A stretch of 64,000 nucleotides of DNA, taken from positions 1 to 64,000 of the IMG/VR virus record IMGVR_UViG_3300046616_000314; one strand, written 5' to 3'. Numbering within the stretch: position 1 is the first letter of the stretch; each line of letters opens with the position of its first letter. Positions 1,994 through 36,811 of the stretch are shown piece after piece. Under the pieces are notes generated by a model. The model had not been told where the DNA came from. It ran no database searches and saw only the letters and a list, made by a program, of their open reading frames with translations. The translations under genes and the position numbers were made by a program.

Positions 1994-2262
1994 TTAACTT
2001 GAAATAGTACGGCGTCATCATCTGATTTGAAAGCTACGATCAAATCATAGCTACAAGCAAAATTCGGAAAGTCTGTTGAAAATTCATCGGGATCAAAGAA
2101 GAGTGGTGCATAGCCGAACTGTTCTTTGCACCATGCTTTGATTTCTGGTTTCAAATGCCAATGCGCGGTTGACGTATTGTCGTCCAGCCCGTTGAGGTAG
2201 CTGAAACCTTTCCGAATGTGAACCGGATAATTTTTAAGGGCGGCGTAGGTAATCATAGCCAC
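1984..2262 (-). CDS. FKLKW-family small protein (subfamily A)
   Basis: IKAWC...GYAPLFFDPD; ends FKSDDDAVLFQVKWL. Confidence 0.85.
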   Translation of the reverse strand: MAMITYAALKNYPVHIRKGFSYLNGLDDNTSTAHWHLKPEIKAWCKEQFGYAPLFFDPDEFSTDFPNFACSYDLIVAFKSDDDAVLFQVKWL

Positions 2263-2516
2263 TTCAATCTAAAAATGGTGGCGTCTTCATCTGACCGAAA
2301 ACACAAAATCATATCTGAGGATTTGGTTTCATGCTGATCGGGATCGTAGAATACGGGTTCGTATCCCAGGTTTGACATTACCCAATCTCTGGACTCTTTG
2401 GTCATCGTCCAGTTCGTGTACTTGCTATCATGAATGTGATGAATCTCGTCGCAAAACATCCGAATTCTAGCCGGGTGCGCGATAAGGACATCATGTGGAA
2501 TAGGAACTAACGTCAT
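2253..2516 (-). CDS. FKLKW-family small protein (subfamily A)
   Basis: GYEPVFYDPD; ends FRSDEDATIFRLKWL; start uncertain (2516-2552). Confidence 0.8.
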   Translation of the reverse strand: MTLVPIPHDVLIAHPARIRMFCDEIHHIHDSKYTNWTMTKESRDWVMSNLGYEPVFYDPDQHETKSSDMILCFRSDEDATIFRLKWL

Positions 2517-2540
2517 AGCCTCTCGCATACCATAATCCGT

Positions 2541-2569
2541 TTGACGATCCAACGAAATTTTCGTATTAA
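2541..2569 (+). promoter_or_regulatory. sigma70-like promoter for the rightward FKLKW array (possibly leaderless)
   Basis: TTGACG-N17-TATTAA with the ATG at 2576 six nt downstream. Confidence 0.5.
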
Positions 2570-2575
2570 AATGCG

Positions 2576-2809
2576 ATGTATGATCTGCGCACCCCTATGA
2601 TGAAGGTTTCCGCATGGCGGCGAGGCGGTTGGGCTCCAATCGCTGACGACGATAACATTATCTATGTGTGGCGTGAGAACATGGCTGAATGGTGTGAACG
2701 CCATTTGAGTGAAGTACCTACGATGATGGCGTCAAACAATCGGGTTAGGTTTTGGATTAGATTTACGAACGAAGACGACTTGCTGATATTCAGGCTCAAA
2801 TGGCTATAG
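2576..2809 (+). CDS. FKLKW-family small protein
   Basis: AEWC; ends FTNEDDLLIFRLKWL. Confidence 0.85.
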   Translation: MYDLRTPMMKVSAWRRGGWAPIADDDNIIYVWRENMAEWCERHLSEVPTMMASNNRVRFWIRFTNEDDLLIFRLKWL

Positions 2810-3081
2810 TTCTTCCCACAACTGCATTAGTTGCACATGATTTTCACGCTTACGCGGCATCCGCGCCCGTGAGAGCGAAAATTTATGCGCTATACGGTGG
2901 TTGGAAATCACATTATTTTTGCTGGACTCTGAAGTCACCTATTGATGATTGGGCTAGGAAACATCTTGGCTATCCAGTCTACATCTTTATGAATTACCAA
3001 TCTGGTGAAAATGCTGCTGCTTCGATAGTCGAATTCGAGACTGAAGAAGACATGATCGCTTTCAAGTTGAAGTGGCTATGA
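2800..3081 (+). CDS. FKLKW-family small protein
   Basis: Start ATG formed by the K-W codons of the previous gene; ends FETEEDMIAFKLKWL. Confidence 0.85.
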   Translation: MAIVLPTTALVAHDFHAYAASAPVRAKIYALYGGWKSHYFCWTLKSPIDDWARKHLGYPVYIFMNYQSGENAAASIVEFETEEDMIAFKLKWL

Positions 3082-3368
3082 TCGAAATCAATCGCGCCCG
3101 CCGCAAGAAAATTTGCTGCAAAAAAGGTATCCCTCCCCGGATAGCACGGCGATGCTATGATATCGTTCTGGCATCGGATATGGGTCGATGCAACGGCGCG
3201 AAGCGGTGTAAGAAAGAAGTAGAAAACTGGTGCGCCCAAAAGTTCGGCGTCATCCCGCTTGTCATGTTTTTCTATTTTGACGATAACGATTATGACTCTG
3301 TGACGCAGTATCTAGTCGGCTTGCCAAATGAAGAAGCTGAAATGATGTTCGCGATGAAGTGGCTATGA
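3072..3368 (+). CDS. FKLKW-family small protein
   Basis: ENWC...FG; ends LPNEEAEMMFAMKWL; alternative start 3078. Confidence 0.8.
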   Translation: MAMIEINRARRKKICCKKGIPPRIARRCYDIVLASDMGRCNGAKRCKKEVENWCAQKFGVIPLVMFFYFDDNDYDSVTQYLVGLPNEEAEMMFAMKWL

Positions 3369-3643
3369 TTAAAATAAGCATTTCACACGGGCTGATACAT
3401 CATTTCGCTAGCATTAGCATACCGGGAGAATGGTTGGATACCACGCCGAGAAGTTATAGCTATAGTGTTTTAGGAAAAATGCACCAATGGTGTATGAAAC
3501 GTCAAATCTGCATCCGGGTAATAGCTGTTCATAAAGGGCTACCACATAATAACTTGATTGCGGATGCCTACCATTTCCATATAGAATTGACCGGAAATAC
3601 CACCGACGAAACCGAAGTAGAATTCAAGTTGAAATGGCTATGA
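3359..3643 (+). CDS. FKLKW-family small protein
   Basis: QWC; ends [12 protein letters not shown]. Confidence 0.8.
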   Translation: MAMIKISISHGLIHHFASISIPGEWLDTTPRSYSYSVLGKMHQWCMKRQICIRVIAVHKGLPHNNLIADAYHFHIELTGNTTDETEVEFKLKWL

Positions 3644-3885
3644 AATTCAAATCTTCTACGACATATCCGATGGTCGTTGCGGCTAATAAAATATCCGGCT
3701 TGTTCTTTGGTCATCGAAACAAGAGCGATATTCTTATTCGTATGCCATCGGCGATGTTTGAATGGTTGGACAATAACGAACCGGATTGGCGGATGAGGTT
3801 AGAATACTTTCCGTTGTCCGATACGGTTGAATTTCAGTTTGAAGACCCAGACAACTTGGCGATGTTCAAATTGAAATTTCTATAA
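3634..3885 (+). CDS. FKLKW-family small protein
   Basis: FEWL; ends [15 protein letters not shown]. Confidence 0.85.
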
Positions 3886-3939
3886 GATAAATATTGATCC
3901 GAACCCATCGGGTCTATATAGTAAGAATAAGAGTTAAGG

Positions 3940-4016
<77 letters not shown>

Positions 4017-4033
4017 ATAATTCTTTTTACGGC

Positions 4034-4108
4034 GCGCGGTTAGCTCAGTGGTAGAGCGTCTCGTTTACACCGAGAGGGTCGGCGGTTCAAGCCCGTCACC
4101 GCGCACCA
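4034..4108 (+). tRNA. tRNA-Val(TAC)
   Basis: GCGCGGT/ACCGCGC acceptor stem, TCTCG-TT-TAC-AC-CGAGA anticodon arm, CCA. Confidence 0.95.
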
Positions 4109-4123
4109 AACATTTCAAAGCAA

Positions 4124-4462
4124 ATGACAGCAACTCTTACATTTCTGTTTAATGATACTCATATTTTCGAACCCGATTATGTTCGTGGTTGGGTTATTAG
4201 TGACGAATACGATACCACGTATCAGTACGATCCCTATAAGAAAACGCGATGTCAAGAACCCCCGATGCGGTCAGAGATCATCGAATGGCTAGATAGTCAT
4301 TACGAAGGCGAATATACTTTCGAAAAATATATGAAGCCGTTAAGCACTAAACGCTTCACACGAGAATTTGGCACGATTGAAATCATGCTGGATAAACCAT
4401 ACGGCTTGCATTGTCATTGCACTGAAGAAATGGCGATGCATTTTCGGTTGAAATTCGGATGA
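4124..4462 (+). CDS. FKLKW-family protein
   Basis: IIEWL; ends TEEMAMHFRLKFG. Confidence 0.8.
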   Translation: MTATLTFLFNDTHIFEPDYVRGWVISDEYDTTYQYDPYKKTRCQEPPMRSEIIEWLDSHYEGEYTFEKYMKPLSTKRFTREFGTIEIMLDKPYGLHCHCTEEMAMHFRLKFG

Positions 4463-4776
4463 CTGGATTTCCTTATGTAGTCGAATACGCGGACTATGCC
4501 CGACAGCACACCGGGTCTTTCCGTATAGAACAGTGTTATCCAATTCATGAATGGTTAGAAGCAAATTATCCTGAGTTGGAATGCGCGTATCATGGCGCCG
4601 GTGGATGGTATGAAAAATACAAGAATTGCCCCGGTAAAAATGCAATTTGTCCCGATAAAGATTTTAGAATTGATATCCTCTATAATCCAAAATACATGGG
4701 CGATACGCGAGATACTTGCCTTGTGAGTTTCAAGGACGAACAGGTTGCCATGCATTTTAAACTAAAATTTGGTTGA
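4459..4776 (+). CDS. FKLKW-family protein
   Basis: IHEWL; ends FKDEQVAMHFKLKFG; ATGA overlap. Confidence 0.85.
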   Translation: MTGFPYVVEYADYARQHTGSFRIEQCYPIHEWLEANYPELECAYHGAGGWYEKYKNCPGKNAICPDKDFRIDILYNPKYMGDTRDTCLVSFKDEQVAMHFKLKFG

Positions 4777-4801
4777 CACGCTCTAGTTCTCAGACTAAGG
4801 T
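4773..4801 (+). promoter_or_regulatory. sigma70-like promoter
   Basis: TTGACA-N17-TAAGGT; the same hexamers occur at 57126-57154. Confidence 0.6.
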
Positions 4802-4932
4802 GTTGTCAGCTAGGGAGTTGAAAGTAATGGGTGTGGGCAACTGCACTTTGCTCCAAGAGGATGAGGGCACACCGGGAGCCCAAATTTCTCCATGGCGGTG
4901 GCGCCGCTAAAGAAGTTTTGAAGACGTAACGT

Positions 4933-5007
4933 GGTGGTATAGCTCAGCGGTAGAGCGTCACACTCATAATGTGAATGTCGGTAGTTCAAGTCTACCTACC
5001 ACTACCA
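4933..5007 (+). tRNA. tRNA with CAT anticodon (elongator Met or Ile2)
   Basis: TCACA-CT-CAT-AA-TGTGA anticodon arm, no initiator GGG/CCC pairs, CCA. Confidence 0.9.
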
Positions 5008-5017
5008 ACGTCTTCAT

Positions 5018-5093
5018 GCTGGGGTAGCTCAGATGGTAGAGCATCGGATTGAAAATCCGAGTGTCACTGGTTCGATCCCAGTTCCTAGCACCA
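5018..5093 (+). tRNA. tRNA-Phe(GAA)
   Basis: TCGGA-TT-GAA-AA-TCCGA anticodon arm, CCA. Confidence 0.95.
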
Positions 5094-5111
5094 ATTTTTC
5101 TGCGAGTGACG

Positions 5112-5330
5112 ATGAGAACCATTGTATTTCGTACCCAGGCTGAACGCATTAAGTTGGCGAATTCAGTCTTGGAAATCGGTAGAGACAAGGTGTTCCAACG
5201 TCAAGTGCGTACGTGGATGCATAAGCGTTTATCGCATCCCGCGTGGTTCTCATTTAGTCGTCAATGGGGCGATATGTTGTGTTTCGCCACGGAAGAAGAC
5301 GCCGCACTCTTCAAGTTGAAATGGCTATGA
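5112..5330 (+). CDS. FKLKW-family small protein
   Basis: VRTWM; ends FATEEDAALFKLKWL; start placed after the tRNA. Confidence 0.85.
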   Translation: MRTIVFRTQAERIKLANSVLEIGRDKVFQRQVRTWMHKRLSHPAWFSFSRQWGDMLCFATEEDAALFKLKWL

Positions 5331-5653
5331 AAAACTACGACCGCAATGCCAGATTGATGTACGATCCCACTCAGTTGAAGGGGTATCGTATTACCCCGGA
5401 TGGGAAGGGGATCGAAGTCAATCGTTTCGGTCTTCGCTACAGTGAATCTTTTGCCATATCAGGCATCCCCCGCGTGGGGCACACAAACGATTTGGTCGTG
5501 ACCAAGCGGCGCCTTCGCGATGATTCTATTGAAGTCTGGGAATGGATGGAGCGCGTAGGCATCGACATTCATTTGTCAGGCGGTCATGGGGCTCACGTTC
5601 TTGTCGGACTGTCCGATGACGATTTCGCTCTGTTCAAGCTCAAGTGGCTCTGA
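5327..5653 (+). CDS. FKLKW-family protein
   Basis: ATGA overlap; VWEWM; ends LSDDDFALFKLKWL. Confidence 0.85.
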   Translation: MKNYDRNARLMYDPTQLKGYRITPDGKGIEVNRFGLRYSESFAISGIPRVGHTNDLVVTKRRLRDDSIEVWEWMERVGIDIHLSGGHGAHVLVGLSDDDFALFKLKWL

Positions 5654-5943
5654 TGCTCGACGCAGTTAGGTTCACTGAGACCGGGGTGATGCTATCCGTC
5701 CCTCGTTCAGAAATGCGATCTGAGTTTCGCTTGGGCTTGCTGCTGTTCATGAAAACTCGTAGCACGCTCATGCGTATCCTTTCTGGGTCGAATGCCCAGT
5801 TCATGTATTTTCTTGAAAAGAATAATATTGAATACGTCATCGGCAACACAGAGCGGTGTAGCATCACCGACTGTTGTTACGTGCCTCTTCATTTCGAAAA
5901 TGTAGATGATCTTGTTTTTGTGAAGATGAAGTTTACCCGATGA
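5644..5943 (+). CDS. FKLKW-family protein
   Basis: Ends FENVDDLVFVKMKFTR; alternative start 5653. Confidence 0.75.
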   Translation: MALMLDAVRFTETGVMLSVPRSEMRSEFRLGLLLFMKTRSTLMRILSGSNAQFMYFLEKNNIEYVIGNTERCSITDCCYVPLHFENVDDLVFVKMKFTR

Positions 5944-6245
5944 GTTATGATCGCGATCAGCCACTCTATTTCGAGGATGAAAGCTGTCATTATTACCGTA
6001 ATGAGGCTGGTAAAGAAATTCAGCTTTATTATGTTGGGTTCAGAATTTCGACAGCCCGATATTACGAACGGCATCGAGCCGGAATGATAGTCGATATCGA
6101 AGACGTTGACACACGGGCTGTCCCGGCATTCTTGTGGTTACAGGAACGCGGTCATCTTAAAACTATTCATGCATTCCGGGGACCGCATATTCTGGTCGAT
6201 CTGGAACTAGACGAATATGTGGAATTCAAACTGAAATTTAAATAA
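5940..6245 (+). CDS. FKLKW-family protein
   Basis: GPHILVDLELDEYVEFKLKFK, resembling the 5327 gene. Confidence 0.8.
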   Translation: MSYDRDQPLYFEDESCHYYRNEAGKEIQLYYVGFRISTARYYERHRAGMIVDIEDVDTRAVPAFLWLQERGHLKTIHAFRGPHILVDLELDEYVEFKLKFK

Positions 6246-15769: not shown

Positions 15770-16045
15770 CTATAGCCATTTCAGTTTGAAAGCTATTGCC
15801 GCATCATCATTCGGAATAGTAATGATGATCTGCCACGCGAAAGCAGTAACGCCATCATCAGACCAACCCGTCTTCATAGGGGGTCCATGTTGAACCGTGT
15901 TGTTGGAATAATAGTAGCCATGAAGCGCGGTGGTGCTCACGTGCTCGCCAACGTGTTCTTCCATCCACGCCCTGAATTCTGGGGTGTAATTGAAGTTGAC
16001 GTAAATGTTGGGATAATTCAGCGTGGAAATGTCAAATTTATTCAT
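15770..16045 (-). CDS. FKLKW-family protein (subfamily FTPEF-x-AWM)
   Basis: YTPEFRAWMEEHVG; IPNDDAAIAFKLKWL. Confidence 0.85.
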   Translation of the reverse strand: MNKFDISTLNYPNIYVNFNYTPEFRAWMEEHVGEHVSTTALHGYYYSNNTVQHGPPMKTGWSDDGVTAFAWQIIITIPNDDAAIAFKLKWL

Positions 16046-16385
16046 CTAGCATACCCCTATGCCAAATTTCACCGCCCCATTTGATTTTGAATAGCGCAGC
16101 GTCTTCCTTGTGAAGGAAAATAATTTCTTCTTTCCAGCCGTCATTGATATGATTCAGTGTGCCCCATCCACGTTCCGGCTTATCGGCTCGAAACACTTTT
16201 CCATCGACGGTTGCGAGACCGCTCAGCGTGTGAAGCATATGCATGGGACCGATGTTTTCCAACATCCATGCCTGAAACTCAGGCGTGAATTCGTCGGCGC
16301 CGACACGCATTTCTTGGTTATAGATGATGGGGTCCAGGCGCGAGACCACGATTCTGTATTCAGACAAAGCCATGGCTACGACCAC
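16038..16385 (-). CDS. FKLKW-family protein (subfamily FTPEF-x-AWM)
   Basis: FTPEFQAWMLENIG; FLHKEDAALFKIKWG. Confidence 0.85.
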   Translation of the reverse strand: MVVAMALSEYRIVVSRLDPIIYNQEMRVGADEFTPEFQAWMLENIGPMHMLHTLSGLATVDGKVFRADKPERGWGTLNHINDGWKEEIIFLHKEDAALFKIKWGGEIWHRGMLDE

Positions 16386-16603
16386 TTCAACTTAATGAAA
16401 GCAGAATGTTCGTCGGATCGAACTACGATTTCGATAACAGTGGAGCGAAAGCAGATGAAGTAATCCCAAGAATCGGGATCAGACATAAAGAGCCCGCGAT
16501 CATAGCACGGTTGGGTGCTGATATTTTCCTTCAAATATTTCATGATGTCGCGATATTTTTCATCACCGCTGTCTGAACGAGGAATGGTAATCATTATCCC
16601 CAC
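16376..16603 (-). CDS. FKLKW-family small protein
   Basis: Ends RSDEHSAFIKLKWS. Confidence 0.75.
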   Translation of the reverse strand: MGIMITIPRSDSGDEKYRDIMKYLKENISTQPCYDRGLFMSDPDSWDYFICFRSTVIEIVVRSDEHSAFIKLKWS

Positions 16604-17154
16604 CTGATCTTAAACATGGTTGCGATCTCTTCATTCAAGAAGAAGAAATTTTGTTCACGCCGCGCGTTTTGGTAATGGGTCCAGAACCCTTCGGTCAGAC
16701 CGGTGTTTTGGCGATTGATGAAAACACTGAGATCGACCAACGATCCCACGTGCTTTTTTGACCATTCCAAAAACTCTTCCGTGTAATGAACATCCGTCCA
16801 GCCACCGCCATTGGGAGCGATGGTTTTCGGCATGACACTCAACGTCACACAGTATTTGTGGAAATGCGGAGCAACCTTCGCCATCACGTCGTTCGGAAAA
16901 TCGATCCGTTCCTTGGAAAAAGTGTTGATGTCATTTTCGCCAAATCTTTTGGCGCGGCGATTGTCCACCCCGGCTCGCCATGCGGCATAGGTAAAGGTCC
17001 CCGCAATTTGTCGCGAGGGAAGATCGGGATACGAGAAACCGGACACGTAAGCCGTCTTGGACGTATTTGCCCCGCCCATAACCGCGCCCTCGCGACACCA
17101 GCGTTCGTATTGGGATTGAAGCATCCGGTTTTTGAAACGCTTCCGTACTTTCAT
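16594..17154 (-). CDS. FKLKW-family protein with extra N-terminal domain
   Basis: YTEEFLEWSKKHVG; FLNEEIATMFKIRWG; N-terminal AYxxG...AAWRAG. Confidence 0.8.
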   Translation of the reverse strand: MKVRKRFKNRMLQSQYERWCREGAVMGGANTSKTAYVSGFSYPDLPSRQIAGTFTYAAWRAGVDNRRAKRFGENDINTFSKERIDFPNDVMAKVAPHFHKYCVTLSVMPKTIAPNGGGWTDVHYTEEFLEWSKKHVGSLVDLSVFINRQNTGLTEGFWTHYQNARREQNFFFLNEEIATMFKIRWG

Positions 17155-17363
17155 CGGAAATTTTTCATGTATTTCGGATTCAGCAGGCTATACGGATTGT
17201 CCATCCGCGTGAAATCCGATGCCTTCAGTTCTTCTTCGGCTTGTTGCCAGCCCTTGTTCCAAGCGGCGATCAGAAATTCCCGCTTGTAGGGATTCTGGGT
17301 CAGCTTACCATTGGCGTACCGGCAATCATAACCTGCCCTGGTGGCGATTTCGACTTGGGTCAT
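17151..17363 (-). CDS. ribosome modulation factor (RMF)-like protein
   Basis: AGYDC...G...NPY...AAWNKGWQQA parallels the RMF GYxAG...CPY...WLGGW pattern. Confidence 0.6.
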   Translation of the reverse strand: MTQVEIATRAGYDCRYANGKLTQNPYKREFLIAAWNKGWQQAEEELKASDFTRMDNPYSLLNPKYMKNFR

Positions 17364-17365
17364 GA

Positions 17366-17557
17366 TTAGGCTCCGAACAAATAAGGACGAACGATGATGG
17401 CGAAACCCACGACGACCACGGCGGCGACGTATCGATAATACGCCCAGAGTTTCCACATGACATCATTCCGAAGAACGAGATCGGACGCAGCCGCCAGCAA
17501 CGCCCAGATGGCATACATGACGATGGCGATCACGCCGATTTGGATGATAATGATCAC
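17366..17557 (-). CDS. small two-TM membrane protein
   Basis: Hydrophobic 63 aa ORF. Confidence 0.6.
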   Translation of the reverse strand: MIIIIQIGVIAIVMYAIWALLAAASDLVLRNDVMWKLWAYYRYVAAVVVVGFAIIVRPYLFGA

Positions 17558-17691
17558 GCCAGCCCCATCGCATAAGCCAGGGTGAAGGGCGGCATACCGA
17601 ACACGTCGGTATAGTTGTCCATATCATCGTAGCCTTCGGTTTCCGAAGGGGCGGTGATTTCGACTTCCGGCTCTTGATTGTCTTGCGGCAT
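17554..17691 (-). CDS. 45-aa acidic peptide
   Basis: MPQDNQEPEVEITAPSET... with GGAGA SD and a TTGACA promoter near 17749 (manual translation). Confidence 0.5.
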   Translation of the reverse strand: MPQDNQEPEVEITAPSETEGYDDMDNYTDVFGMPPFTLAYAMGLA

Positions 17692-17745
17692 GAAAAAATC
17701 TCCAAAACAATTATGTCTTGGAGATTACTACGAAAAACGAAAGTG

Positions 17746-18024
17746 TCAACGAAAATTACACTTGAGTTTGATAAGGACTCTATCTTCGTCGTTCGGAATT
17801 CGAAATATAATATGTCGCAGTTGTGGGTTAACTAGAAGAAACACTTCATAGCCCATTTGCAAAACTTGTCCTGCGAACGCCATTTTTTGTGCTACCATTG
17901 GTATAAGATCAAGGATCAAGTCATCCTCTTGCGCACAATACGGTATTTCGTTCGCGTGCGACCGAACGGCTTTTTGCATTTCTTCATCAAAAATGAGAGG
18001 TTCTATAAGCCAATCCATCATCAC
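17746..18024 (-). CDS. FKLKW-family protein
   Basis: IPNDEDRVLIKLKC. Confidence 0.7.
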   Translation of the reverse strand: MMMDWLIEPLIFDEEMQKAVRSHANEIPYCAQEDDLILDLIPMVAQKMAFAGQVLQMGYEVFLLVNPQLRHIIFRIPNDEDRVLIKLKCNFR

Positions 18025-18326
18025 ATATACTTCAGCTTGAACATAGCCATGTCATCTGCATTCTTGAATTCAATGACATAGCCATCATGACAACCATCAA
18101 GGCTCAATTCGCGGACACAGAAATCTCGCGAAATCGCCTGTTTTACCAGCGCGTGCTTTCGCTCGCGATCTTGTTTGATCCGAATGGTATATGTCTGAGG
18201 CATGTATGGAAGCGGTTCTGACCATTCATAGCGTTCATCACCGGCAACGATGATTTGTGACATGACTCGCGCCATGACCCACAATTTCATTTCGTCTTCG
18301 TCGGGCTCCATTACGTGCGTCCCCAC
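18021..18326 (-). CDS. FKLKW-family protein
   Basis: FKNADDMAMFKLKYM. Confidence 0.85.
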   Translation of the reverse strand: MGTHVMEPDEDEMKLWVMARVMSQIIVAGDERYEWSEPLPYMPQTYTIRIKQDRERKHALVKQAISRDFCVRELSLDGCHDGYVIEFKNADDMAMFKLKYM

Positions 18327-18547
18327 TTGAACGCGAACGCAACGGCGTCTTCCATGGTCAGGAAGTATGCGACGTAGGTGTTTCTCGACATATCGAGCGT
18401 ATCGAAGGTAACGCTCTCGTAGTTCTCTACGTTATCGCGCACCCACGCCCAGGCATCGGGATCATACAATTTATACGGAACAAGCGGATAAGTCGTGTCC
18501 ACACGAAACTTACCCGCGTTGCGTCCTTCCTTAATCTCGCGAATCAT
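18311..18547 (-). CDS. FKLKW-family protein
   Basis: AWAWVRDNV; FLTMEDAVAFAFKWG; TAATG coupling. Confidence 0.8.
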   Translation of the reverse strand: MIREIKEGRNAGKFRVDTTYPLVPYKLYDPDAWAWVRDNVENYESVTFDTLDMSRNTYVAYFLTMEDAVAFAFKWGRT

Positions 18548-18783
18548 TAGGCGCCCAGAGCGAGGGCAACTTCCGACAGCTTGATATTGTGGGTCACGGA
18601 AACTTCCATCGACCACAGATCGCCATCGGGACCGTCGAGCACTTCACGAATAAAATTGTCAACCGACAGCCCTTGCTTTATATTGAGGGTCAGGTTGTGC
18701 GCAGGGTACGAGATCGTGTTAGCTTCGGTGTCGATCACCATGGAAGCCGATGCGTTCAAGCTATTGATCAAATTCACGAGCAT
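18547..18783 (-). CDS. hypothetical protein
   Basis: GGGAGA SD, 78 aa. Confidence 0.65.
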   Translation of the reverse strand: MLVNLINSLNASASMVIDTEANTISYPAHNLTLNIKQGLSVDNFIREVLDGPDGDLWSMEVSVTHNIKLSEVALALGA

Positions 18784-29861: not shown

Positions 29862-30181
29862 TAAGATTTCGTGAACCAGTCATAGACAGCCGGGCGCATC
29901 GCCGCATTGTCTTGGCTCACATGGGTAAATCCTGGCGCGGCGATTCTGTTGAACGGGATGAAGACAGAAATAGCGGGGCTTTTGTCCTCAAGAGAAAAAG
30001 CATCAAATTTTAATTTAAGCAGAGCAACGTCTTGATCGCTCTCGACGTAAAACAAGCAAGTCATCGTGTGGATATCAAAGCCCACGAATTCCACCAGATC
30101 GACACAGTTTTCCGAGAACCATCCGCGTTGGATGTTGCTGAGTTTGGCTTCACTGATGCCGTAATAGGGAAATGGTGTCAT
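29759..30181 (-). CDS. FKLKW-family protein with internal motif and second partial domain
   Basis: GWFSENC...VESDQDVALLKLKF, followed by AVYDWF. Confidence 0.7.
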   Translation of the reverse strand: MTPFPYYGISEAKLSNIQRGWFSENCVDLVEFVGFDIHTMTCLFYVESDQDVALLKLKFDAFSLEDKSPAISVFIPFNRIAAPGFTHVSQDNAAMRPAVYDWFTKSYYNPKWVTKDNGVIITVRDIYEAHGIQKFDWTQI

Positions 30182-30495
30182 CCGAATTTCATCTTGAAAC
30201 TAAACGCGACATCATCGTTGATGAACGAAAACTCTATGGTATCGCTCATGACACGATAGATATCCCATGTTTGGGCATACGGTCCAGCGTTCAGTGTCAA
30301 CCATTCTTCCGTGGGATTGTTAAGGCACCATGTCATATGGACATAGGACACCTTAATAAATGGAACAGAAACAACCGAACCAAGCCAAAGCGGAATACGT
30401 CTGCTTGCTCTTGTTTTCATGGCAGTTTGGCGAGTTATGTTCGTAAGTATCACGCTCAATTGTTCATCAAGCCATGTTTGTTCGACTTTATCCAT
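30178..30495 (-). CDS. FKLKW-family protein
   Basis: EEWL...NAG; FINDDVAFSFKMKFG. Confidence 0.8.
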   Translation of the reverse strand: MDKVEQTWLDEQLSVILTNITRQTAMKTRASRRIPLWLGSVVSVPFIKVSYVHMTWCLNNPTEEWLTLNAGPYAQTWDIYRVMSDTIEFSFINDDVAFSFKMKFG

Positions 30496-30715
30496 ATTTC
30501 AAAATCGCTTTCACGCAATCCTCATCGGACTTGAATGCGATTATCGAAACATTTTCTGGTTTGAATTCCAGATAGACCCAATTGTCTTGGGTCTCATCGT
30601 TAAGCCATTTGACGATAGCAGAAGTCAGACGCCCTTCAGGACCGACGACGTTGCGCAACGCACCCGTCGAGACACCCGGTTCCAAATACCAAACACTCAC
30701 GTTGCGCCTTTCCAT
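30488..30715 (-). CDS. FKLKW-family small protein
   Basis: IVKWL; FKSDEDCVKAILKYG. Confidence 0.75.
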   Translation of the reverse strand: MERRNVSVWYLEPGVSTGALRNVVGPEGRLTSAIVKWLNDETQDNWVYLEFKPENVSIIAFKSDEDCVKAILKYG

Positions 30716-30921
30716 TTCAATTTTGCTTCGATGGCGTCATTGAGTTTTTTGAACCCGATTACGGCAACGTGCCGGTCAGCATCATAAAATTCATAGAACC
30801 AACGAGAGCCATAGTTCTCGCGGAGAAACTTACCAAGTTGCGTCACCAAATGTCCATTCCGTGTGCCACCGCTCGGAAATTCTACCAGATGAGGCGTGGC
30901 GTGCCATTTAGGACTGTTCAT
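30697..30921 (-). CDS. FKLKW-family small protein
   Basis: FLRENYGSRW; FKKLNDAIEAKLKWK. Confidence 0.75.
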   Translation of the reverse strand: MNSPKWHATPHLVEFPSGGTRNGHLVTQLGKFLRENYGSRWFYEFYDADRHVAVIGFKKLNDAIEAKLKWKGAT

Positions 30922-31205
30922 GCCCCACCCCACTTCAAGAGGAACAATGCCACGTCTTCTTCGGTGTGACAAAACACATGAAGATAATATTTTCTTTTTT
31001 CGGTAGTGTAAGACGCCACTGGTTCGATGAACGGTCCATCAACGAACATTCCAGGGTGATTTTCTAGACACCAATCGTCAATTTTATTACCCCAATTGCC
31101 CGTGAACGGATATTCACTAACCGGGCAATAGAGTTTGATGAAATACAAACCCACGCCAGGAGAGATCGGAGCCTTTCGTTTTTTGACCGTGTACCTCATA
31201 GCCAT
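30918..31205 (-). CDS. FKLKW-family small protein
   Basis: IDDWCLEN; HTEEDVALFLLKWG. Confidence 0.85.
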   Translation of the reverse strand: MAMRYTVKKRKAPISPGVGLYFIKLYCPVSEYPFTGNWGNKIDDWCLENHPGMFVDGPFIEPVASYTTEKRKYYLHVFCHTEEDVALFLLKWGGA

Positions 31206-31504
31206 TTCAACCGAAACAACACGGCGTCTTCATCCGTAGAAAAACGAATGAAAGCCCTCCGGTTAGCGTCGTCCCTTGCCCACGCGAAACACATTTCGGG
31301 AATGTCATTGAGATATTGCCGACACCATTTCCATACCCTGTACTTGGGTGTGGTCTCAATGAGAAGAGTGGGAAAGTCGCTGTAAGCATCGGCGGGAATG
31401 TTGTCCCTGCCAATCACGGAAGAAAGTTTATACACCTTATCGAACGGGAGGTTGATCCAACCCGCCCGTTCCAACTCTCGCTGAGATTTATATTCTTTAT
31501 TCAT
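31196..31504 (-). CDS. FKLKW-family small protein
   Basis: VWKWC; FSTDEDAVLFRLKWL. Confidence 0.85.
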   Translation of the reverse strand: MNKEYKSQRELERAGWINLPFDKVYKLSSVIGRDNIPADAYSDFPTLLIETTPKYRVWKWCRQYLNDIPEMCFAWARDDANRRAFIRFSTDEDAVLFRLKWL

Positions 31505-31833
31505 CAGCGTTGCGCCAGATAGTTATTCAGCAAGCCTTCGATGTTGGCTTTGCCTGCCACATTCTGACTGTGAACGTAGAATGAAAAATCATCAGGGATG
31601 AATTCACCATCCGCGCTCAAATCGACGTTCACTAACCACCACGCGAAATCATAGCCAGACTCTTCAAGGGTCTCGTCTGATTTCAAGCCAAGGTCATGAT
31701 CGAAACTGATGAACGCCGGGCATCCAAATGCGCTCACGGTGGATATGGCTTGATAAACGTTGCGCACGATTTTCCATTCCTCGCCATCGTCGGGCGGGAA
31801 ACGTTCGTCATCGATAAAAAGTTTGTAGGTCAT
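31504..31833 (-). CDS. cyclic-phosphate-processing receiver-like domain protein
   Basis: KLFIDDER, ISFDHDLG, SGYDFAWWL and VHSQNVAG motifs. Confidence 0.75.
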   Translation of the reverse strand: MTYKLFIDDERFPPDDGEEWKIVRNVYQAISTVSAFGCPAFISFDHDLGLKSDETLEESGYDFAWWLVNVDLSADGEFIPDDFSFYVHSQNVAGKANIEGLLNNYLAQR

Positions 31834-32339
31834 CGATTGGGGTCCAACAAAATTGAAACCCATTCACACACGGTATCCCAACAACCCAATTCGTCGCAGG
31901 CGTCTTTGTTCAGGACAATGAAACCCGGTTGGTATCTGCTATTGGTGTGATCGCACGCCAACCAACCAACAGTCGGTTCGTCTTCGCGATAGGAAAACAA
32001 ATCGCCCTTGTTTGCCAATTGGGTTTCGCCAGATGAGCGAAGCAGGAAATCCCCAATATGTTCTTTGATGCCGATCAGAGCCAATAGCATCGGCGGCTTA
32101 TGCGCAGTCGTTGTTTCCATGGTTTGGAAAGGATTGATCATCAAATATGTGTAGATGGCTTCTTCTTTTGCGCGTTCTTGGATATATGCAATCGCACGAT
32201 CTTTCGTGCCGAAATCATATTCGGCATAGTACATTTCATCCAACTGGCATGGGATTGCATAGCTACCACCGCTTTTCAGAGTGGCTACTTTTCTTCTCGT
32301 TTCATCAACGAGCACAATACGGTTCCAATTGGCGTACAA
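31830..32339 (-). CDS. hypothetical protein
   Basis: 169 aa, GGAGA SD. Confidence 0.7.
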   Translation of the reverse strand: MYANWNRIVLVDETRRKVATLKSGGSYAIPCQLDEMYYAEYDFGTKDRAIAYIQERAKEEAIYTYLMINPFQTMETTTAHKPPMLLALIGIKEHIGDFLLRSSGETQLANKGDLFSYREDEPTVGWLACDHTNSRYQPGFIVLNKDACDELGCWDTVCEWVSILLDPNR

Positions 32340-32443
32340 TTAAGTCTCCGAATACTTGCGATTTCACCATATCAAAGGGATAGGAAAAGTCAACGATTTC
32401 CTGACGAAAAATGGTTGACGGATATAATTAATTTTCGTAAGCC

Positions 32444-33460
32444 ATGCCATATATCGTTTTGAGATTGATAATGGCACGCCCAAATTCTCTTCCTAAGAAA
32501 CCCACTCTTTCCAAGCTGACCGATGAAGAACAAATCGCTATCGCGGCGATTCGCTTCAATCCTGCGCTGTTCAAGAAAATCAAGAACCCGACGCAGGCTG
32601 TCTTGGAATATGGGTTGGATTCCTATCCGCAATTGATCAGCAAGATTGATAAACCAACCAACGAAATGTGGCTCCGCGCCATCAAGCGTTCGGATGGTAG
32701 CGTGATCAAATATCATCCAAATCCTTCCGAAGAGTTGCAGTTCGAATCAATTCATCGTTCTCCGATGAATTTGAAGTGCATCAAGGATCACACTCCGCTC
32801 GTTGCCAACTTGGCTATTCGTTACAATGGCTCGGCGTGGCGATATGTGAAGGCGTGCCATAAGACGGATGAGCTTATGGAACTAGCGGCTCGCCAGTATG
32901 GGTTCCAAATACGGCATTGCAAGAACCCAACCGAGAAAACGATCATGTCGGTTTTGCGTCGTGATCCTGGGCAAATTCGTTATCTTAAGAAACCGTCGAT
33001 TAAGGCGCAATGCACGGCATTTGTGACTTCGCCATATCTCATCAATTCGTATTACCAAAACGACTATCGCGAAACGATGCCCGAAGACGTTGCGTTGGCT
33101 GTCATCCGAGAGAACGGCTTAACACACCATTTGGGTCATCGGGCGCGCAACCCGCGCTATATTGCGTATGCCAGAACGACATTGACCGTCGCTCAATATA
33201 GAAAAATTGAAAACAAGATTACTGAATATAATCGCGTTTTGAAAACTTTGACTAAGCAACAATGCGATTGGTTGATTAAGACCAAGACCAAATTTCATTT
33301 AAAATATGAAGATATGTACAAAGTCGAAGTGCCCGTGTCTGCGACGGCGAAGCCATCAATTCGTCGTCGCAAACCGGCTGTACAAACTATTTCATACGCC
33401 TTGCTATTGTCATTCGACAACGCCGACGATCTCATGATGTTCACGCTCAAATTCGGCTAG
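32444..33460 (+). CDS. helical-repeat (DUF4116-like) protein fused to the C-terminal FKLKW motif
   Basis: About 23-aa repeats (AIxxNPxxIKxIKNPT); ends FDNADDLMMFTLKFG. Confidence 0.8.
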   Translation: MPYIVLRLIMARPNSLPKKPTLSKLTDEEQIAIAAIRFNPALFKKIKNPTQAVLEYGLDSYPQLISKIDKPTNEMWLRAIKRSDGSVIKYHPNPSEELQFESIHRSPMNLKCIKDHTPLVANLAIRYNGSAWRYVKACHKTDELMELAARQYGFQIRHCKNPTEKTIMSVLRRDPGQIRYLKKPSIKAQCTAFVTSPYLINSYYQNDYRETMPEDVALAVIRENGLTHHLGHRARNPRYIAYARTTLTVAQYRKIENKITEYNRVLKTLTKQQCDWLIKTKTKFHLKYEDMYKVEVPVSATAKPSIRRRKPAVQTISYALLLSFDNADDLMMFTLKFG

Positions 33461-33910
33461 GTCTCGCATCATATCGCGATGACCCTGGCGACGTGCCGCA
33501 ACACGCATCCGACGCTTTGCGTGTTGCGCGGCATGGACGCGCTGTCGATAGCACGTGCCATTCCGGCGAACCATGTGATGAACTTTTTCCCACATATAAT
33601 GTAGGTCTGCGCCATCGGAATCGTAGTCGGGATTCCACTCGTAGCGGACCTTCTTGACCATCGCCGGGTAATACTCGTAGCGATAGGCTTCCTCATGGTC
33701 GCCTTCACAATTCCGAAAGACGTATGGGACTTTACGATATTTTTCTCCCATTTCCTCGTACTCAATGCGGAAGCGTACCGGTTCGGGAACTGGTGGCTTG
33801 GGAAGTTTTAGATAGTTGTAATCGGATAATTTGAAACGCCCGTCCTTGGCTTTTGCACAATGGGCATGATTATTGCGATGAAGAATCAATTTACGAATGG
33901 TGCGAGACAC
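33410..33910 (-). CDS. basic hypothetical protein (MSRTIRK...)
   Basis: GTG start with GAGGGAG SD. Confidence 0.7.
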   Translation of the reverse strand: MSRTIRKLILHRNNHAHCAKAKDGRFKLSDYNYLKLPKPPVPEPVRFRIEYEEMGEKYRKVPYVFRNCEGDHEEAYRYEYYPAMVKKVRYEWNPDYDSDGADLHYMWEKVHHMVRRNGTCYRQRVHAAQHAKRRMRVAARRQGHRDMMRDLAEFEREHHEIVGVVE

Positions 33911-34423
33911 AGGTTCTCTCCCTCTCAAAAGGTTGCGGTTAGGTCATGGGGATGCCTTTCTAAAACCATGCGGTTTTAGTGCGCGTGAACGTTCGTCATA
34001 AAGCTAATTGCAGTGGCAATAGCTGCGATACGTTCCTATGAGAGAAGGTATAACTGCACCATAATGTCGTACATACGACCAATTATATGTGTCTTGTAAG
34101 CCTTCTTAATATGAAACACTGAGTAAAGTATGTGTTTCGAATCTCATACTACCATCGAACGAATTTTTGTCAAGAAATTTTAGTTCATTAACGAATATGG
34201 TTGAGAAATCGTTAAAATCGTATTCGTAACCTTAATGTCGCAAAAAAATTTACACTCGCTTAACCAGCGAAAAACCCAAGTGAGACGGGGGTTTTTGCCT
34301 CCTCTACGTTCAAATGTGGCGATAGCGTGGTAAAAAAATGATCAGATCATGCTTGACTAATGGCTAACGACCGGTGTTATCTCCGCTCCACCGACTGGGA
34401 CGTTTGGGGACTGGAAAAAACAC

Positions 34424-34900
34424 ATGAAAATCAAGCTCGCACTTATTGGTGCGCTAAGCCTAGCACTTGCCGGGATCGCACATGCCGAGACCGAAAAGAG
34501 TGCTTGGCAATTTCGCACTCCCGCTGAAACTTCTGTAGCGCAAAACAGCGTTGTTTTGATGCAGCAGAAGCAGAACGACTACTACAAGATGTACAAGAAT
34601 GGCGGCTCTGGCGTCATTGGCGGCGGAAGTGGTCTGTTCGGTTCGTCAACTTCGGCGACCAACAACTTCACGCAAATCGTCAACCAGAACACCACCAACA
34701 ACAACTGTTCTGCAACGGGCGCCGGATCGGCTCTGACGTGTGGTTCGTCTTCTACCAATACGAACAACGTCAATCAGACGACCACGGACTCGACCGCTGA
34801 TGCGAACAACACCATCACCGGTAACACCATCACGAACCAGCCCTCGACCACGACGAATTCGGGCAACACCGGTTCGACGGTAACTGGGGGCAACCAATGA
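34424..34900 (+). CDS. secreted N/T/S/G-rich HfaA/curlin-like protein
   Basis: Signal peptide ending AHA; GSSTSATNNFTQIVNQ...NSGN low-complexity region; first gene of the operon before the CsgG/HfaB homolog. Confidence 0.65.
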   Translation: MKIKLALIGALSLALAGIAHAETEKSAWQFRTPAETSVAQNSVVLMQQKQNDYYKMYKNGGSGVIGGGSGLFGSSTSATNNFTQIVNQNTTNNNCSATGAGSALTCGSSSTNTNNVNQTTTDSTADANNTITGNTITNQPSTTTNSGNTGSTVTGGNQ

Positions 34901-35889
34901 ACAAGCGTAACCTTTTCCTGACCGTCGCTCTTATGATGTCGATGGCAATTCCTGCCGTGGCTTCCGCCGGAAGCAAGAAGGCAGTCAACCCGATGAACCC
35001 ACGCAATGCGATGGTTCTGGGATCGGCGCCGGAAAACAACGTGACCGCGACTCAAAACGGTTTCGTCTGTTTCGCCAACTACCTCGCCAAGGACCCGCGC
35101 CGCCCGGTCTTCTCGGTTGGTCGCCTGCGCGATGACTCGGGAAAGTTTTCGAATTTCGCCAATGAGCCGGGTTCGGCTGGCGGCTACGAAATGACCCAAG
35201 GTCTGTCCAACATGGTCTATACGGCTCTGGGCAAGCTGGCTCCTGACTTCGCCATCGTTGAGCGCACGGATACCGCAATCGTGGACTCCGAAATCTCGCT
35301 CGCCAAGGAAAGCCTGTTGGGCGATCCTTCGGAGCAAGGCACGTGGGCTGTCGATAAGAACGGGCAAAAGATTTTGCTCGGCAAAGGTCTTCGGTCCTTG
35401 ACCGGCGGTCAATTCCAGGGTGTTGATTACTACATCACTGGTGCGATCACCGAAATCAACTACAACATTTCGTCGGGCGGCGCCCAACTCAAGGTTCAAG
35501 GGATCGGCGGCGGCAATCGCGTCTATTCCATGAGCATTGCGATGGACCTTCGCATCGTGGATGCCCGCACGCTCCGCGTGGTCAAGACCGTCTCTGAACG
35601 GAAGAAGATCAGCGGTAATGAAACCGAATTTGGTGTCTTTAATTTCCTCGGAGATTATCTGATCGACATCAATGCGGGTCGTAAGCTTCAAGAGCCCATT
35701 CAACTGGGCGTGCGAGCGACTATGGAATCAGCCCTACTCAAGTTGGTCGGGGCTGCATATGGCACGAATTACGGGGAAACTTGTAGCTCGTATGCCGCCA
35801 CTACCTACGGTCAAGTTGTGCCTGTCACGACTCCCGTAGCCGACAACACGGCTGATCCCATCGCGGATAAGCTGTCGGCGTCGAAGTAA
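34897..35889 (+). CDS. hfaB: CsgG/HfaB-family secretion pore protein
   Basis: VGRLRDDSGK, TQG..MVYTALGK, IVERTD, DYYITGAITEINYN, MDLRIVDARTL and EPIQLGVRA motifs. Confidence 0.85.
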   Translation: MNKRNLFLTVALMMSMAIPAVASAGSKKAVNPMNPRNAMVLGSAPENNVTATQNGFVCFANYLAKDPRRPVFSVGRLRDDSGKFSNFANEPGSAGGYEMTQGLSNMVYTALGKLAPDFAIVERTDTAIVDSEISLAKESLLGDPSEQGTWAVDKNGQKILLGKGLRSLTGGQFQGVDYYITGAITEINYNISSGGAQLKVQGIGGGNRVYSMSIAMDLRIVDARTLRVVKTVSERKKISGNETEFGVFNFLGDYLIDINAGRKLQEPIQLGVRATMESALLKLVGAAYGTNYGETCSSYAATTYGQVVPVTTPVADNTADPIADKLSASK

Positions 35890-35947
35890 GACGTACCCTT
35901 TAAAAAGCACGGGCATTCCGCTCGGCATAGGAAAGAGACCCTACAAT

Positions 35948-36811
35948 ATGCGTAATCTTCTCATCGCGGCTTCTGCCGTAGCTCTGTTCGCTGGCATCGC
36001 TACTCAAGCTTCGGCTACGGGCGACTCCTACGGCGTCCAACTGAACCTGGGCACCCTGCAACTGGGTCAGTCGAACGTTCATCGCACGTCGGTTGGCGGC
36101 AAGCTGAACCTCTCGACCGCCGCTGTCGGCACCAACCTGTCGGTCCTGTCGGACATCCCGGCGACGACTGACCACACCAGCAACAGCGGTCGTACCAACG
36201 GCGACGCTCGCGTGGCTTCTCTGCAAGTCAACGCCCTGACCGCCCAAATCGCGACCACCAGCGTCACTCGTTCGTCGGTCGGCGCCGATCTGACCACCAG
36301 CACGCAAGCCATCGGCAACGCTGTTGATGTCGAATCGACCCACAACTACGTGTCGAACGGCTACGTCACCAGCAACACCGATTTCGACAAGTCGATCAGC
36401 CTGCAAGCCAACGTCGGCGCCGTGCAACTCGCCACCACCGACATCGCCCGCGTTTCGGTCGGTGACGATCTGGACGTGAGCACCATCGCTGTCGGCAACA
36501 CTTCGTCGTTCTTCGGCGCCAAGGGCGTTGCGGCTGCGACCGGTCAACTGAACCTGGGTACGGTGCAACTGGCTTCGACCGACTTCACTCGCTCGTCGGT
36601 CGCTGACAACGCTTCGTTCTCGACTTCGGCTTTCGGCAACGTGGCGTCGTACACCGGCAACACCGTCGATCCGCTGACCGTCCAAGTCAACGCTCTGACC
36701 ATCCAAGGCGCCAGCACCAACATCGGTCGCTCGTCCTTCGGCGGTAACGTTTCGGTCGATACCTCGGCGGTCGGTAACGCGATCACCGTCTCGACCAACC
36801 TGAACAACTAA
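35948..36811 (+). CDS. secreted beta-repeat HfaD-like protein
   Basis: Signal peptide; five ~38-aa repeats Q-x-N-x4-Q-x-A...R-x-S-[VF]...S-T-x-A-x-G-N. Confidence 0.75.
   Translation: MRNLLIAASAVALFAGIATQASATGDSYGVQLNLGTLQLGQSNVHRTSVGGKLNLSTAAVGTNLSVLSDIPATTDHTSNSGRTNGDARVASLQVNALTAQIATTSVTRSSVGADLTTSTQAIGNAVDVESTHNYVSNGYVTSNTDFDKSISLQANVGAVQLATTDIARVSVGDDLDVSTIAVGNTSSFFGAKGVAAATGQLNLGTVQLASTDFTRSSVADNASFSTSAFGNVASYTGNTVDPLTVQVNALTIQGASTNIGRSSFGGNVSVDTSAVGNAITVSTNLNN

What the first reader, a model, noticed from the sequence alone, without database searches (positions are those of the whole stretch)
32444..33460. Helical-repeat protein carrying the FKLKW tail, showing the tail is a portable module
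Seen: about seven ~23-aa DUF4116-like repeats followed by LLLSFDNADDLMMFTLKFG. Other fusions include a tandem doubled domain (25642), an internal motif (29759) and extra N-terminal domains (10327, 16594, 26691, 36876). Repeat solenoids are typical protein-binding scaffolds, so a repeat region plus constant tail is the architecture expected of a substrate adaptor (inference).
Basis: partly seen in the sequence, partly recalled or inferred. Interest (0 to 1): 0.65.

Follow-up and report, generated by a model that had tools for sequence, protein, structure and literature searches.

The report
Repeat protein fused to expanded phage domain
A gene in a 561-kb uncultivated phage joins a DUF4116 helical-repeat scaffold to one divergent copy of a small, unnamed domain that this phage carries about 237 times, so the conserved 'tail' is the end of a folded, movable domain and not a loose peptide tag.

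Summary
Window 32444..33460 (+) is an intact 338-aa ORF; a public gene call starts at Met10 (32471). AlphaFold2 gives eight helix-pair repeats of about 23 aa (residues 27-206, pLDDT above 90). Pfam DUF4116 is sub-threshold, but six of the eight distant homologues carry PF13475.

The C-terminus scores with family HMMs built without it: 13.4 bits for the tail-only model and 17.5 bits for the whole-domain model, against decoy maxima of 8.5 and 9.8. hhalign gives probability 90%. Nine other DUF4116 proteins score 0.9 bits or less.

The 'tail' is not a linear tag. It is the last strand and helix of a 55-85-aa ferredoxin-like domain. In the target, an upstream helix (residues 271-280) and strand (284-290) also belong to that domain.

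The domain has about 237 copies in this genome (13% of it). It has 4,441 cluster representatives in metagenomes and no Pfam or PHROG model. It also occurs fused to DUF7448, in tandem copies, and once N-terminally, so portability is supported.

The substrate-adaptor idea remains untested inference. The conserved positions look more like fold core. My reading, at moderate confidence, is a host-takeover binder with a solenoid specificity module and a shared family domain.

The parts
32401..32428 (+). sigma-70-like promoter match (CTGACG, 16 nt, TATAAT) in the divergent intergenic region upstream of the ORF
   Evidence: 10 of 12 consensus positions. This is a consensus match only, not shown to function.
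32444..33460 (+). The ORF: 338 aa from ATG 32444; the likelier start is ATG 32471 (Met10, 329 aa); stop TAG at 33458-33460
   Evidence: The public gene call P0002 is 329 aa and 100% identical.
32522..33061 (+). DUF4116-like alpha-solenoid: eight helix-pair repeats of 22-24 aa (residues 27-206)
   Evidence: AF2 pLDDT of about 85-98 over this stretch. PHROG 5925 matches at 1.9e-23. Homologues carry PF13475. Pfam itself is sub-threshold at 18.8 versus 24.9 bits. This is the only such domain in the genome.
33083..33241 (+). Helical linker (residues 214-266), modelled with low confidence
   Evidence: AF2 pLDDT 45-78.
33254..33454 (+). Divergent copy of the family's ferredoxin-like domain core: helix 271-280, strand 284-290, strand 318-324, helix 327-337
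   Evidence: The whole-domain HMM aligns residues 246-337 at 17.5 bits. MAFFT places the target's Asp-Trp-Leu helix under the family's Trp-Cys helix. AF2 gives the same helix-strand-strand-helix order as in the small paralogue.
33314..33394 (+). Basic, Pro-rich, disordered insertion in the beta2-beta3 hairpin (residues 291-317)
   Evidence: AF2 pLDDT below 55. It appears as an insertion relative to the family in the HMM alignment.
33389..33457 (+). The 'FKLKW tail' (residues 316-338): last strand, acidic turn and C-terminal helix. Here the ending reads FTLKFG.
   Evidence: Tail-only HMM 13.4 bits against a decoy maximum of 8.5. hhalign probability 90.4%. AF2 pLDDT 88-92.

Best explanation
The ORF is a real gene of a 561-kb uncultivated myovirus-like jumbo phage. 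The nearest isolate by DnaB is Agrobacterium phage Atu_ph07. The protein has two modules.

Module 1 is an eight-repeat DUF4116 alpha-solenoid, a surface typical of protein binders.

Module 2 is a divergent but complete copy of a small ferredoxin-like domain (order beta-alpha-beta-beta-alpha) that ends at the C-terminus with a motif like F-x-S-E-E-D-A-x-x-F-K-L-K-W. The phage has expanded this domain to about 237 mostly single-domain genes of about 94 aa.

The quoted tail is the last strand and helix of that domain. It is mostly fold core, so it is conserved because it holds the domain together. The exposed sheet face, the loops and the N-terminal half vary.

Inferred mechanism: the family is a repertoire of small intracellular binders or effectors made for host takeover or counter-defence. 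In this one gene, a solenoid has been grafted on in place of the usual variable N-terminal half. The solenoid would supply target specificity, and the C-terminal domain would supply whatever activity or contact all family members share.

The architecture is shown by the evidence. The binder role and the host-takeover role are inference.
For: - Intact ORF with an independent public gene call.
- Solenoid modelled at pLDDT above 90, and DUF4116-bearing homologues.
- The family signal in the C-terminus exceeds all decoys. Nine other DUF4116 proteins, including Atu_ph07 AUZ95001.1, score 0.9 bits or less.
- Conservation in the small paralogues extends beyond the tail to a Trp at 104 of 110 in helix alpha1. 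Conserved and variable positions alternate in the last strand.
- AF2 of a small member gives beta-alpha-beta-beta-alpha. The best PDB matches are ACT and RRM folds at Z 4.3-6.1.
- There are 237 ORFs, 13.1% of the genome, and 201 of them carry the domain at the C-terminus.
- Codons of F-K-L-K-W vary synonymously, so selection acts on the protein.
- No paralogue pair exceeds 49% identity, so the expansion is old and maintained.
- The domain also occurs fused to DUF7448, in tandem copies, and N-terminally.
- A sigma-70-like promoter lies just upstream, which would fit early host-RNAP transcription (weak evidence).
Against: - No function is known for DUF4116 or for the family. There is no Pfam or PHROG model and no paper.
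- The target's copy is one of the weakest members: 13-17 bits, with Lys replaced by Thr and Trp by Phe in the motif, and a 27-residue disordered insertion.
- hhalign aligns only the last 23 columns. Support for a complete domain therefore rests on 4 extra HMM bits, on MAFFT, and on an AF2 run that used that same alignment.
- The fusion was not found in four other family-bearing viral contigs, though all four are fragments.
- The two near-invariant lysines of the last helix might be exposed, which would favour a shared contact over pure fold core.
- No expression or interaction data could be obtained.
Confidence: 0.45

Rival explanations
1. The constant C-terminal element is a docking handle, either a linear motif or the helical face of the domain. 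It ties every family member, including this solenoid protein, to one common machine such as a protease, a packaging or ejection apparatus, or a polymerase. The protein would then be a substrate adaptor, analogous to poxvirus ankyrin-PRANC proteins.
For: - The motif is extremely conserved: Phe 109 of 110 and the second Lys 106 of 110. The two basic positions could be solvent-exposed.
- The element sits at the very C-terminus in 201 of 237 members.
- It is joined to unrelated N-terminal parts: DUF4116 here and DUF7448 at G000 285619.
- One relative joins it to a piece of the capsid protein Gp23.
Against: - Conservation is not confined to a tail. It extends to helix alpha1 and follows a core-like alternating pattern.
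- The element also occurs internally, N-terminally and in tandem, where a free C-terminus is absent.
- The target itself lacks one of the two lysines and the Trp.
- No F-box, PRANC or degron-type family matches at E up to 1.
- No partner candidate exists to test.
Confidence: 0.2
2. Fossil fusion. A DUF4116 gene read through into the decaying 3' end of a neighbouring family gene. The C-terminal segment would be a neutral remnant with no role.
For: - The HMM scores are low, and the motif is degraded to FTLKFG.
- There is a long disordered insertion.
- The gene sits alone on the + strand between minus-strand family genes.
- The fusion is absent from the related contigs searched.
Against: - The frame is open over the full 338 codons.
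- The core hydrophobic positions and the acidic turn are retained.
- AF2 is confident (pLDDT 82-92) on the domain's first helix (271-280) and on the last strand and helix from residue 321.
- All 237 paralogues are at most 49% identical to each other, so low similarity is normal for this family.
Confidence: 0.15
3. The family domain is a small nucleic-acid-binding module of RRM or ACT type. The target would tether RNA or DNA, helped by its basic hairpin loop, to whatever the solenoid binds.
For: - The fold matches include RRMs, uL23, KH and ACT domains.
- The last strand plus acidic turn resembles the RNP1-to-alpha2 region of RRMs (my own knowledge, by eye).
- The target's inserted loop is rich in Arg and Lys.
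Against: - All fold matches have Z below 8, which the tool itself rates as a common arrangement.
- The exposed sheet positions are variable rather than aromatic and conserved.
- No RRM, KH or ACT Pfam hit was found in 55 members.
Confidence: 0.1

Closest known systems
DUF4116 repeat proteins (Pfam PF13475), e.g. Atu_ph07 AUZ95001.1
   Same: Repeats of about 23 aa with an Asn-Pro-Ser/Thr start, forming helix pairs stacked into an alpha-solenoid. The homologues found by sequence carry PF13475. A published contact-based model of DUF4116 is also an alpha-solenoid (PMC8078820).
   Different: The target scores below Pfam's gathering threshold. It is the only one of ten DUF4116 proteins examined that carries the family domain at its C-terminus.
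The unnamed 'FKLKW' small phage domain family (no Pfam or PHROG model): 237 copies here, 68 in a 415-kb IMG/VR contig, two weak copies in Atu_ph07 (AUZ95014.1, AUZ95037.1)
   Same: The last strand, acidic turn and amphipathic C-terminal helix, the upstream Trp helix, and the position at the C-terminus.
   Different: The target is the longest protein that scores with the family HMM in this genome (338 aa; it sits just above the 1e-3 cut-off, whose 237 members have a median of 94 aa and a maximum of 231 aa). Its motif is degraded. It has a 27-residue insertion in the hairpin. It lies outside the tandem arrays and lacks their stop/start overlap.
Poxvirus ankyrin-repeat / PRANC (F-box-like) proteins
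   Same: By analogy only: a repeat scaffold plus a short conserved C-terminal module in a large viral multigene family (my own knowledge).
   Different: There is no sequence or fold relation. The host is a bacterium without SCF ligases. The C-terminal module here is an alpha/beta domain, not a helical F-box.
Lineage-specific expansion of a zinc ribbon in Bacillus phage G (about 35 copies)
   Same: A single small domain amplified within one jumbo phage. The authors called it 'unprecedented' (PMC7824862).
   Different: The expansion here is about seven times larger (237 ORFs, 13% of the genome). The fold is different and there are no metal ligands.
ACT / RRM ferredoxin-like domains
   Same: The beta-alpha-beta-beta-alpha order. 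The best match is the TyrA ACT domain at Z 6.1, rmsd 2.8 A over 62 residues.
   Different: The fourth strand is missing. Scores lie in the range of chance-level common folds. There are no family-defining sequence motifs.

Membership tests
DUF4116 (PF13475) | Score at or above Pfam's gathering threshold (24.9 bits) | tested here: not met
   18.8 bits, E 1.2e-3, best stretch residues 123-159.
DUF4116 (PF13475) | Sequence homologues are themselves PF13475 proteins | tested here: met
   Six of the eight non-self hits (E 5e-14 to 1e-6) carry PF13475. Atu_ph07 and SCTP-2 proteins were hit by tblastn.
DUF4116 (PF13475) | Tandem helix-pair repeats of about 23 aa forming an alpha-solenoid | tested here: met
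   Eight repeats with a period of 22-24 aa and pLDDT of about 85-98. This agrees with the published model.
Unnamed FKLKW domain family of this phage | Significant match to a family HMM built without the target | tested here: met
   13.4 bits (tail-only) and 17.5 bits (whole-domain), against decoy maxima of 8.5 and 9.8. hhalign probability 90.4%.
Unnamed FKLKW domain family of this phage | Upstream Trp-containing helix and a beta hairpin preceding the tail, i.e. the complete domain | tested here: inconclusive
   HMMER and MAFFT align an Asp-Trp-Leu helix (residues 271-280), and AF2 models helix-strand-strand-helix. hhalign aligns only the last 23 columns, and the AF2 run used the same alignment.
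Unnamed FKLKW domain family of this phage | Membership of a tandem array with stop/start overlap | tested here: not met
   The gene stands alone on the + strand between minus-strand genes. It ends GGC TAG with no ATGA overlap.
F-box / PRANC-type substrate adaptors | An F-box-like helical motif recognised by profile, and a cullin-type partner in the host | tested here: not met
   No such Pfam family matches at E up to 1. The C-terminal module is alpha/beta. The partner could not be tested because the host is unknown.
RRM / ACT ferredoxin-like superfolds | A structural match clearly above background, plus the family motifs | tested here: inconclusive
   Best Z 6.1, Foldseek E above 0.5, and no Pfam hit in 55 members.

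The most novel reading that the evidence does not exclude
The FKLKW domain is the constant 'handle' of a virus-encoded repertoire of hundreds of variable binders. A huge phage would use it to plug many different specificities into one shared machine or pathway. Those specificities would come from variable N-terminal halves, a DUF4116 solenoid or a DUF7448 domain. This would be a prokaryotic-virus counterpart of the ankyrin/F-box or BTB expansions of poxviruses and giant viruses. The fusion studied here would be its clearest adaptor-type member.
Probability: 0.15. Interest if true: 0.85.

Novelty: new variant of a known kind. Interest (0 to 1): 0.5.

Why it matters
The fusion is the clearest evidence that the conserved C-terminal element of this phage's very large gene family is an autonomous, transferable domain. 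That turns an anonymous motif into a definable domain family. The family has 4,441 metagenomic cluster representatives and no Pfam or PHROG model. The definition gives boundaries for constructs and a natural test case with specificity module and constant module on one chain.

The family fills 13% of a 561-kb genome. This is far beyond the roughly 35-copy expansion called 'unprecedented' in phage G. Learning what the domain does would explain a sizeable part of why such phages are so large.

The fusion alone does not reveal a mechanism.

Tried and rejected
- Homodimer test of a small paralogue (complex prediction, alignment A2, two copies): no verdict, score 0.00. It is evidence neither for nor against binding.
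- megablast of 30000-36000 against isolated phages found no match.
- tblastn of three small family members against isolated phages found no match.
I replaced it with a degenerate DNA pattern for the motif plus stop codon, which found 11 IMG/VR contigs.
- A literature search for the motif found 0 papers.
- DUF4116 appears in four papers; I read only PMC8078820, which gives a structure model and no function.
- Foldseek against the PDB and BFVD, for both models, gave only generic hits with E above 0.04.
- dN/dS along the domain was not feasible, because no paralogue pair exceeds 49% identity.
- Conservation caused by nucleotide-level coupling signals is rejected for F-K-L-K-W, whose codons vary synonymously. 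It probably does constrain the final Leu and the stop codon.
- The end of the Atu_ph07 DUF4116 protein looks faintly like the tail by eye, but it scores below zero bits with the tail HMM.
- A word search with the alignment found only the phage's own proteins. P0011 on a 13.6-kb Logan contig is identical to the window's protein.

Full report
**Where the window lies.** The window is the first 64 kb of a single 561,116-bp virus record with 48% G+C. It encodes a DnaB-like helicase, a primase, ribonucleotide reductase and a virion structural protein. The DnaB is 52% identical to that of Agrobacterium phage Atu_ph07, and the next-best hits are PA5oct-like and other jumbo myoviruses. No isolated phage matches at the DNA level.

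**The ORF.** Window 32444..33460 (+) is an open frame of 338 codons.
- A public gene call for the same contig is 329 aa, so the start is probably Met10 at 32471. That start follows a weak GAG-containing spacer.
- The gene stands alone on the + strand. Minus-strand genes lie on both sides.
- A sigma-70-like match (CTGACG, 16 nt, TATAAT) lies at 32401-32428 in the divergent upstream gap.
- A convergent ORF at 33410..33928 overlaps the last 51 nt.

**The repeat region.**
- Pfam DUF4116 is sub-threshold at 18.8 versus 24.9 bits.
- Three PHROGs of unknown function match residues 28-203 at 1e-13 to 2e-23.
- The word-indexed protein search returns eight distant homologues (E 5e-14 to 1e-6), six of them annotated PF13475.
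- tblastn finds similar repeats in the jumbo phages SCTP-2, Atu_ph07 and AgentSmith.
- AlphaFold2 on a mixed alignment gives eight helix pairs starting at residues 27, 51, 73, 96, 118, 142, 164 and 186, with pLDDT of about 85-98.
- A published contact-based model of DUF4116 is likewise an alpha-solenoid (PMC8078820).
- Structure searches return only generic helical repeats.
- jackhmmer with residues 21-215 finds no second DUF4116 protein in the 561-kb genome.

**Does the tail belong to the family?** I built two HMMs from paralogues with the target left out.
- The first was a 27-column tail model from 119 sequences.
- The second was an 85-position whole-protein model from 110 small members.
- The target scores 13.4 bits with the tail model (residues 317-338) and 17.5 bits with the whole-protein model (residues 246-337).
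- The best of 4,351 reversed and 21,755 shuffled ORFs reached 8.5 and 9.8 bits respectively. None of 5,000 shuffles of the target's last 100 residues reached the observed values.
- hhalign of residues 230-338 against the 55-sequence alignment A2 gives probability 90.4% and E 1.4e-6 over the last 23 columns.
- As negative controls, nine other DUF4116 proteins score 0.9 bits or less.

The target is nevertheless a weak, divergent member.

**What the tail is.** In 110 small paralogues, conservation is not limited to the last 19 residues.
- A Trp is present in 104 of 110 members, followed by Cys and Asn, about 40 residues upstream. A Pro and a further Trp/Tyr position are also conserved.
- In the last strand, conserved hydrophobic positions alternate with variable ones.
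- AF2 of the neighbouring 101-aa paralogue (31196..31504, minus strand) gives strand, helix, strand, strand, helix. Mean pLDDT is 70 overall and 83-91 over the last strand and helix.
- The best solved matches are ACT domains and RRMs at Z 4.3-6.1. The tool rates this range as a common arrangement.
- The ESM Atlas returns three clusters of 66-69-aa viral hypothetical proteins at TM 0.67-0.73.
- In the target, HMMER and an independent MAFFT alignment both put a helix (residues 271-280, containing Asp-Trp-Leu) under the family's Trp helix.
- AF2 models helix 271-280, strand 284-290, a disordered basic loop 291-317, strand 318-324 and helix 327-337.

I conclude that the tail is the C-terminal strand and helix of a folded domain and that the target probably carries the whole domain. 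The second part is less certain than the first. hhalign sees only the tail, and the AF2 run used the alignment that already embodied this placement.

**The family.**
- With the whole-protein HMM, 237 ORFs of the genome score at i-E below 1e-3. The median length is 94 aa, and together they make up 13.1% of the genome.
- In 201 of them the domain ends within six residues of the C-terminus.
- They form long tandem arrays at 0.5-6 kb, 126-130 kb, 363-386 kb, 402-403 kb and 547-550 kb.
- No pair exceeds 49% identity, so this is an old, maintained expansion and not an assembly artefact.
- Codons of the F-K-L-K-W positions vary synonymously.
- The final Leu and the stop codon are often part of a stop/start overlap. 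The commonest 3' end is AAATGGCTATGA. The next gene starts 10 nt before the end of the stop codon in 66 of 201 cases, and starts in an ATGA overlap in 22.
- None of 55 members hits Pfam, and only one hits a PHROG, at E 0.006. No paper contains the motif.

**The family outside this genome.**
- A degenerate DNA pattern for the motif plus stop codon found 11 IMG/VR contigs with arrays of the same small genes.
- A 415-kb contig has 68 matches and a 252-kb contig has 12. Atu_ph07 has two weak matches, both annotated as hypothetical proteins.
- The exhaustive profile search finds 4,441 cluster representatives at E of 1e-3 or better. Most are 60-110 aa, and some have two or three tandem domains. All are unnamed.

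**Portability.** Besides this ORF:
- G000 285619-286242 joins Pfam DUF7448 (E 1.9e-23) to the domain.
- Several members of 150-231 aa have N-terminal extensions with no Pfam match.
- A 171-aa ORF of the 415-kb contig has the domain first, followed by 48 residues that match the N-terminal part of T4 Gp23.
25642 and 10327 do not score.
- The DUF4116 fusion itself was not found in four family-bearing contigs, all of which are fragments. Atu_ph07's three DUF4116 genes lack the domain.

**Mechanism.** Nothing here measures function. Three observations guide my reading:
- the conserved positions follow a core-like pattern;
- the exposed strand positions, the loops and the N-terminal half are variable;
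- the genes are small, numerous, old and arrayed.

I therefore favour a repertoire of small intracellular binders or effectors. In that reading, the target has a solenoid in place of the usual variable part. The docking-handle (adaptor) model remains possible, mainly because of the two near-invariant basic residues of the last helix. A homodimer test gave no verdict. Run metadata could not be obtained.

**Verdict.** The 'portable module' claim is supported, with the module redefined as a domain. The 'adaptor' claim is untested. The single gene is a new variant of a DUF4116 repeat protein. The family behind it is the more remarkable object: the largest comparable case I found in the literature is a roughly 35-copy zinc-ribbon expansion in phage G (PMC7824862).

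Noticed in passing
whole genome G000 (window 562-6245, 15770-18616 and 30178-31504; also 126-130 kb, 363-386 kb, 402-403 kb and 547-550 kb): About 237 ORFs (median 94 aa) carry the same small domain, 13.1% of a 561-kb phage genome. No pair is more than 49% identical. This is far larger than the ~35-copy expansion reported as unprecedented for phage G.
   Followed up: partly
window e.g. 1252-1261, 2253-2262, 3359-3368; genome-wide: Family genes overlap stop-to-start. The commonest 3' end is AAATGGCTATGA (Lys-Trp-Leu-stop). The next gene's ATG or GTG lies inside the Lys-Trp codons in 66 of 201 cases and in the ATGA in 22 of 201. This ties the usual N-terminus (Met-Ala-Met) to the tail of the preceding gene.
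   Followed up: partly
G000:C1:285619-286242 (+), locus L021: A 207-aa protein with Pfam DUF7448 (E 1.9e-23, residues 21-145) followed by the family domain (residues 140-202, 35 bits). This is a second fusion to an independently defined domain.
   Followed up: partly
L035:136-648 (-), in IMGVR_UViG_3300050120_000230 (415 kb): A 171-aa ORF with the family domain at residues 26-85, followed by 48 residues matching the N-terminal part of the T4 major capsid protein Gp23 (PF07068, E 7.5e-18). The sequence then diverges, and another family gene lies downstream. It could be a duplicated capsid fragment or a capsid-directed fusion.
   Followed up: no
window 33410-33928 (-): A 172-aa convergent ORF overlaps the last 51 nt of the target, reading antisense through the tail codons. 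It has no Pfam or PHROG match.
   Followed up: no
Neither scores with the family HMM.
   Followed up: yes
Atu_ph07 MF403008.1 182838-183185 and 199522-199830 (L013, L014): Two annotated hypothetical proteins of an isolated jumbo phage (AUZ95014.1, AUZ95037.1) are weak members of the family (E 3e-4 to 8e-4). They would give a culturable system in which to study the domain.
   Followed up: partly
Logan assembly of run SRR26076614, 13.6-kb contig: A contig with the same gene order as window 0.5-6 kb encodes a protein identical to window 783-1019 (-). The same phage, or a near-identical one, was therefore sequenced in that run. The DNA could not be fetched.
   Followed up: no
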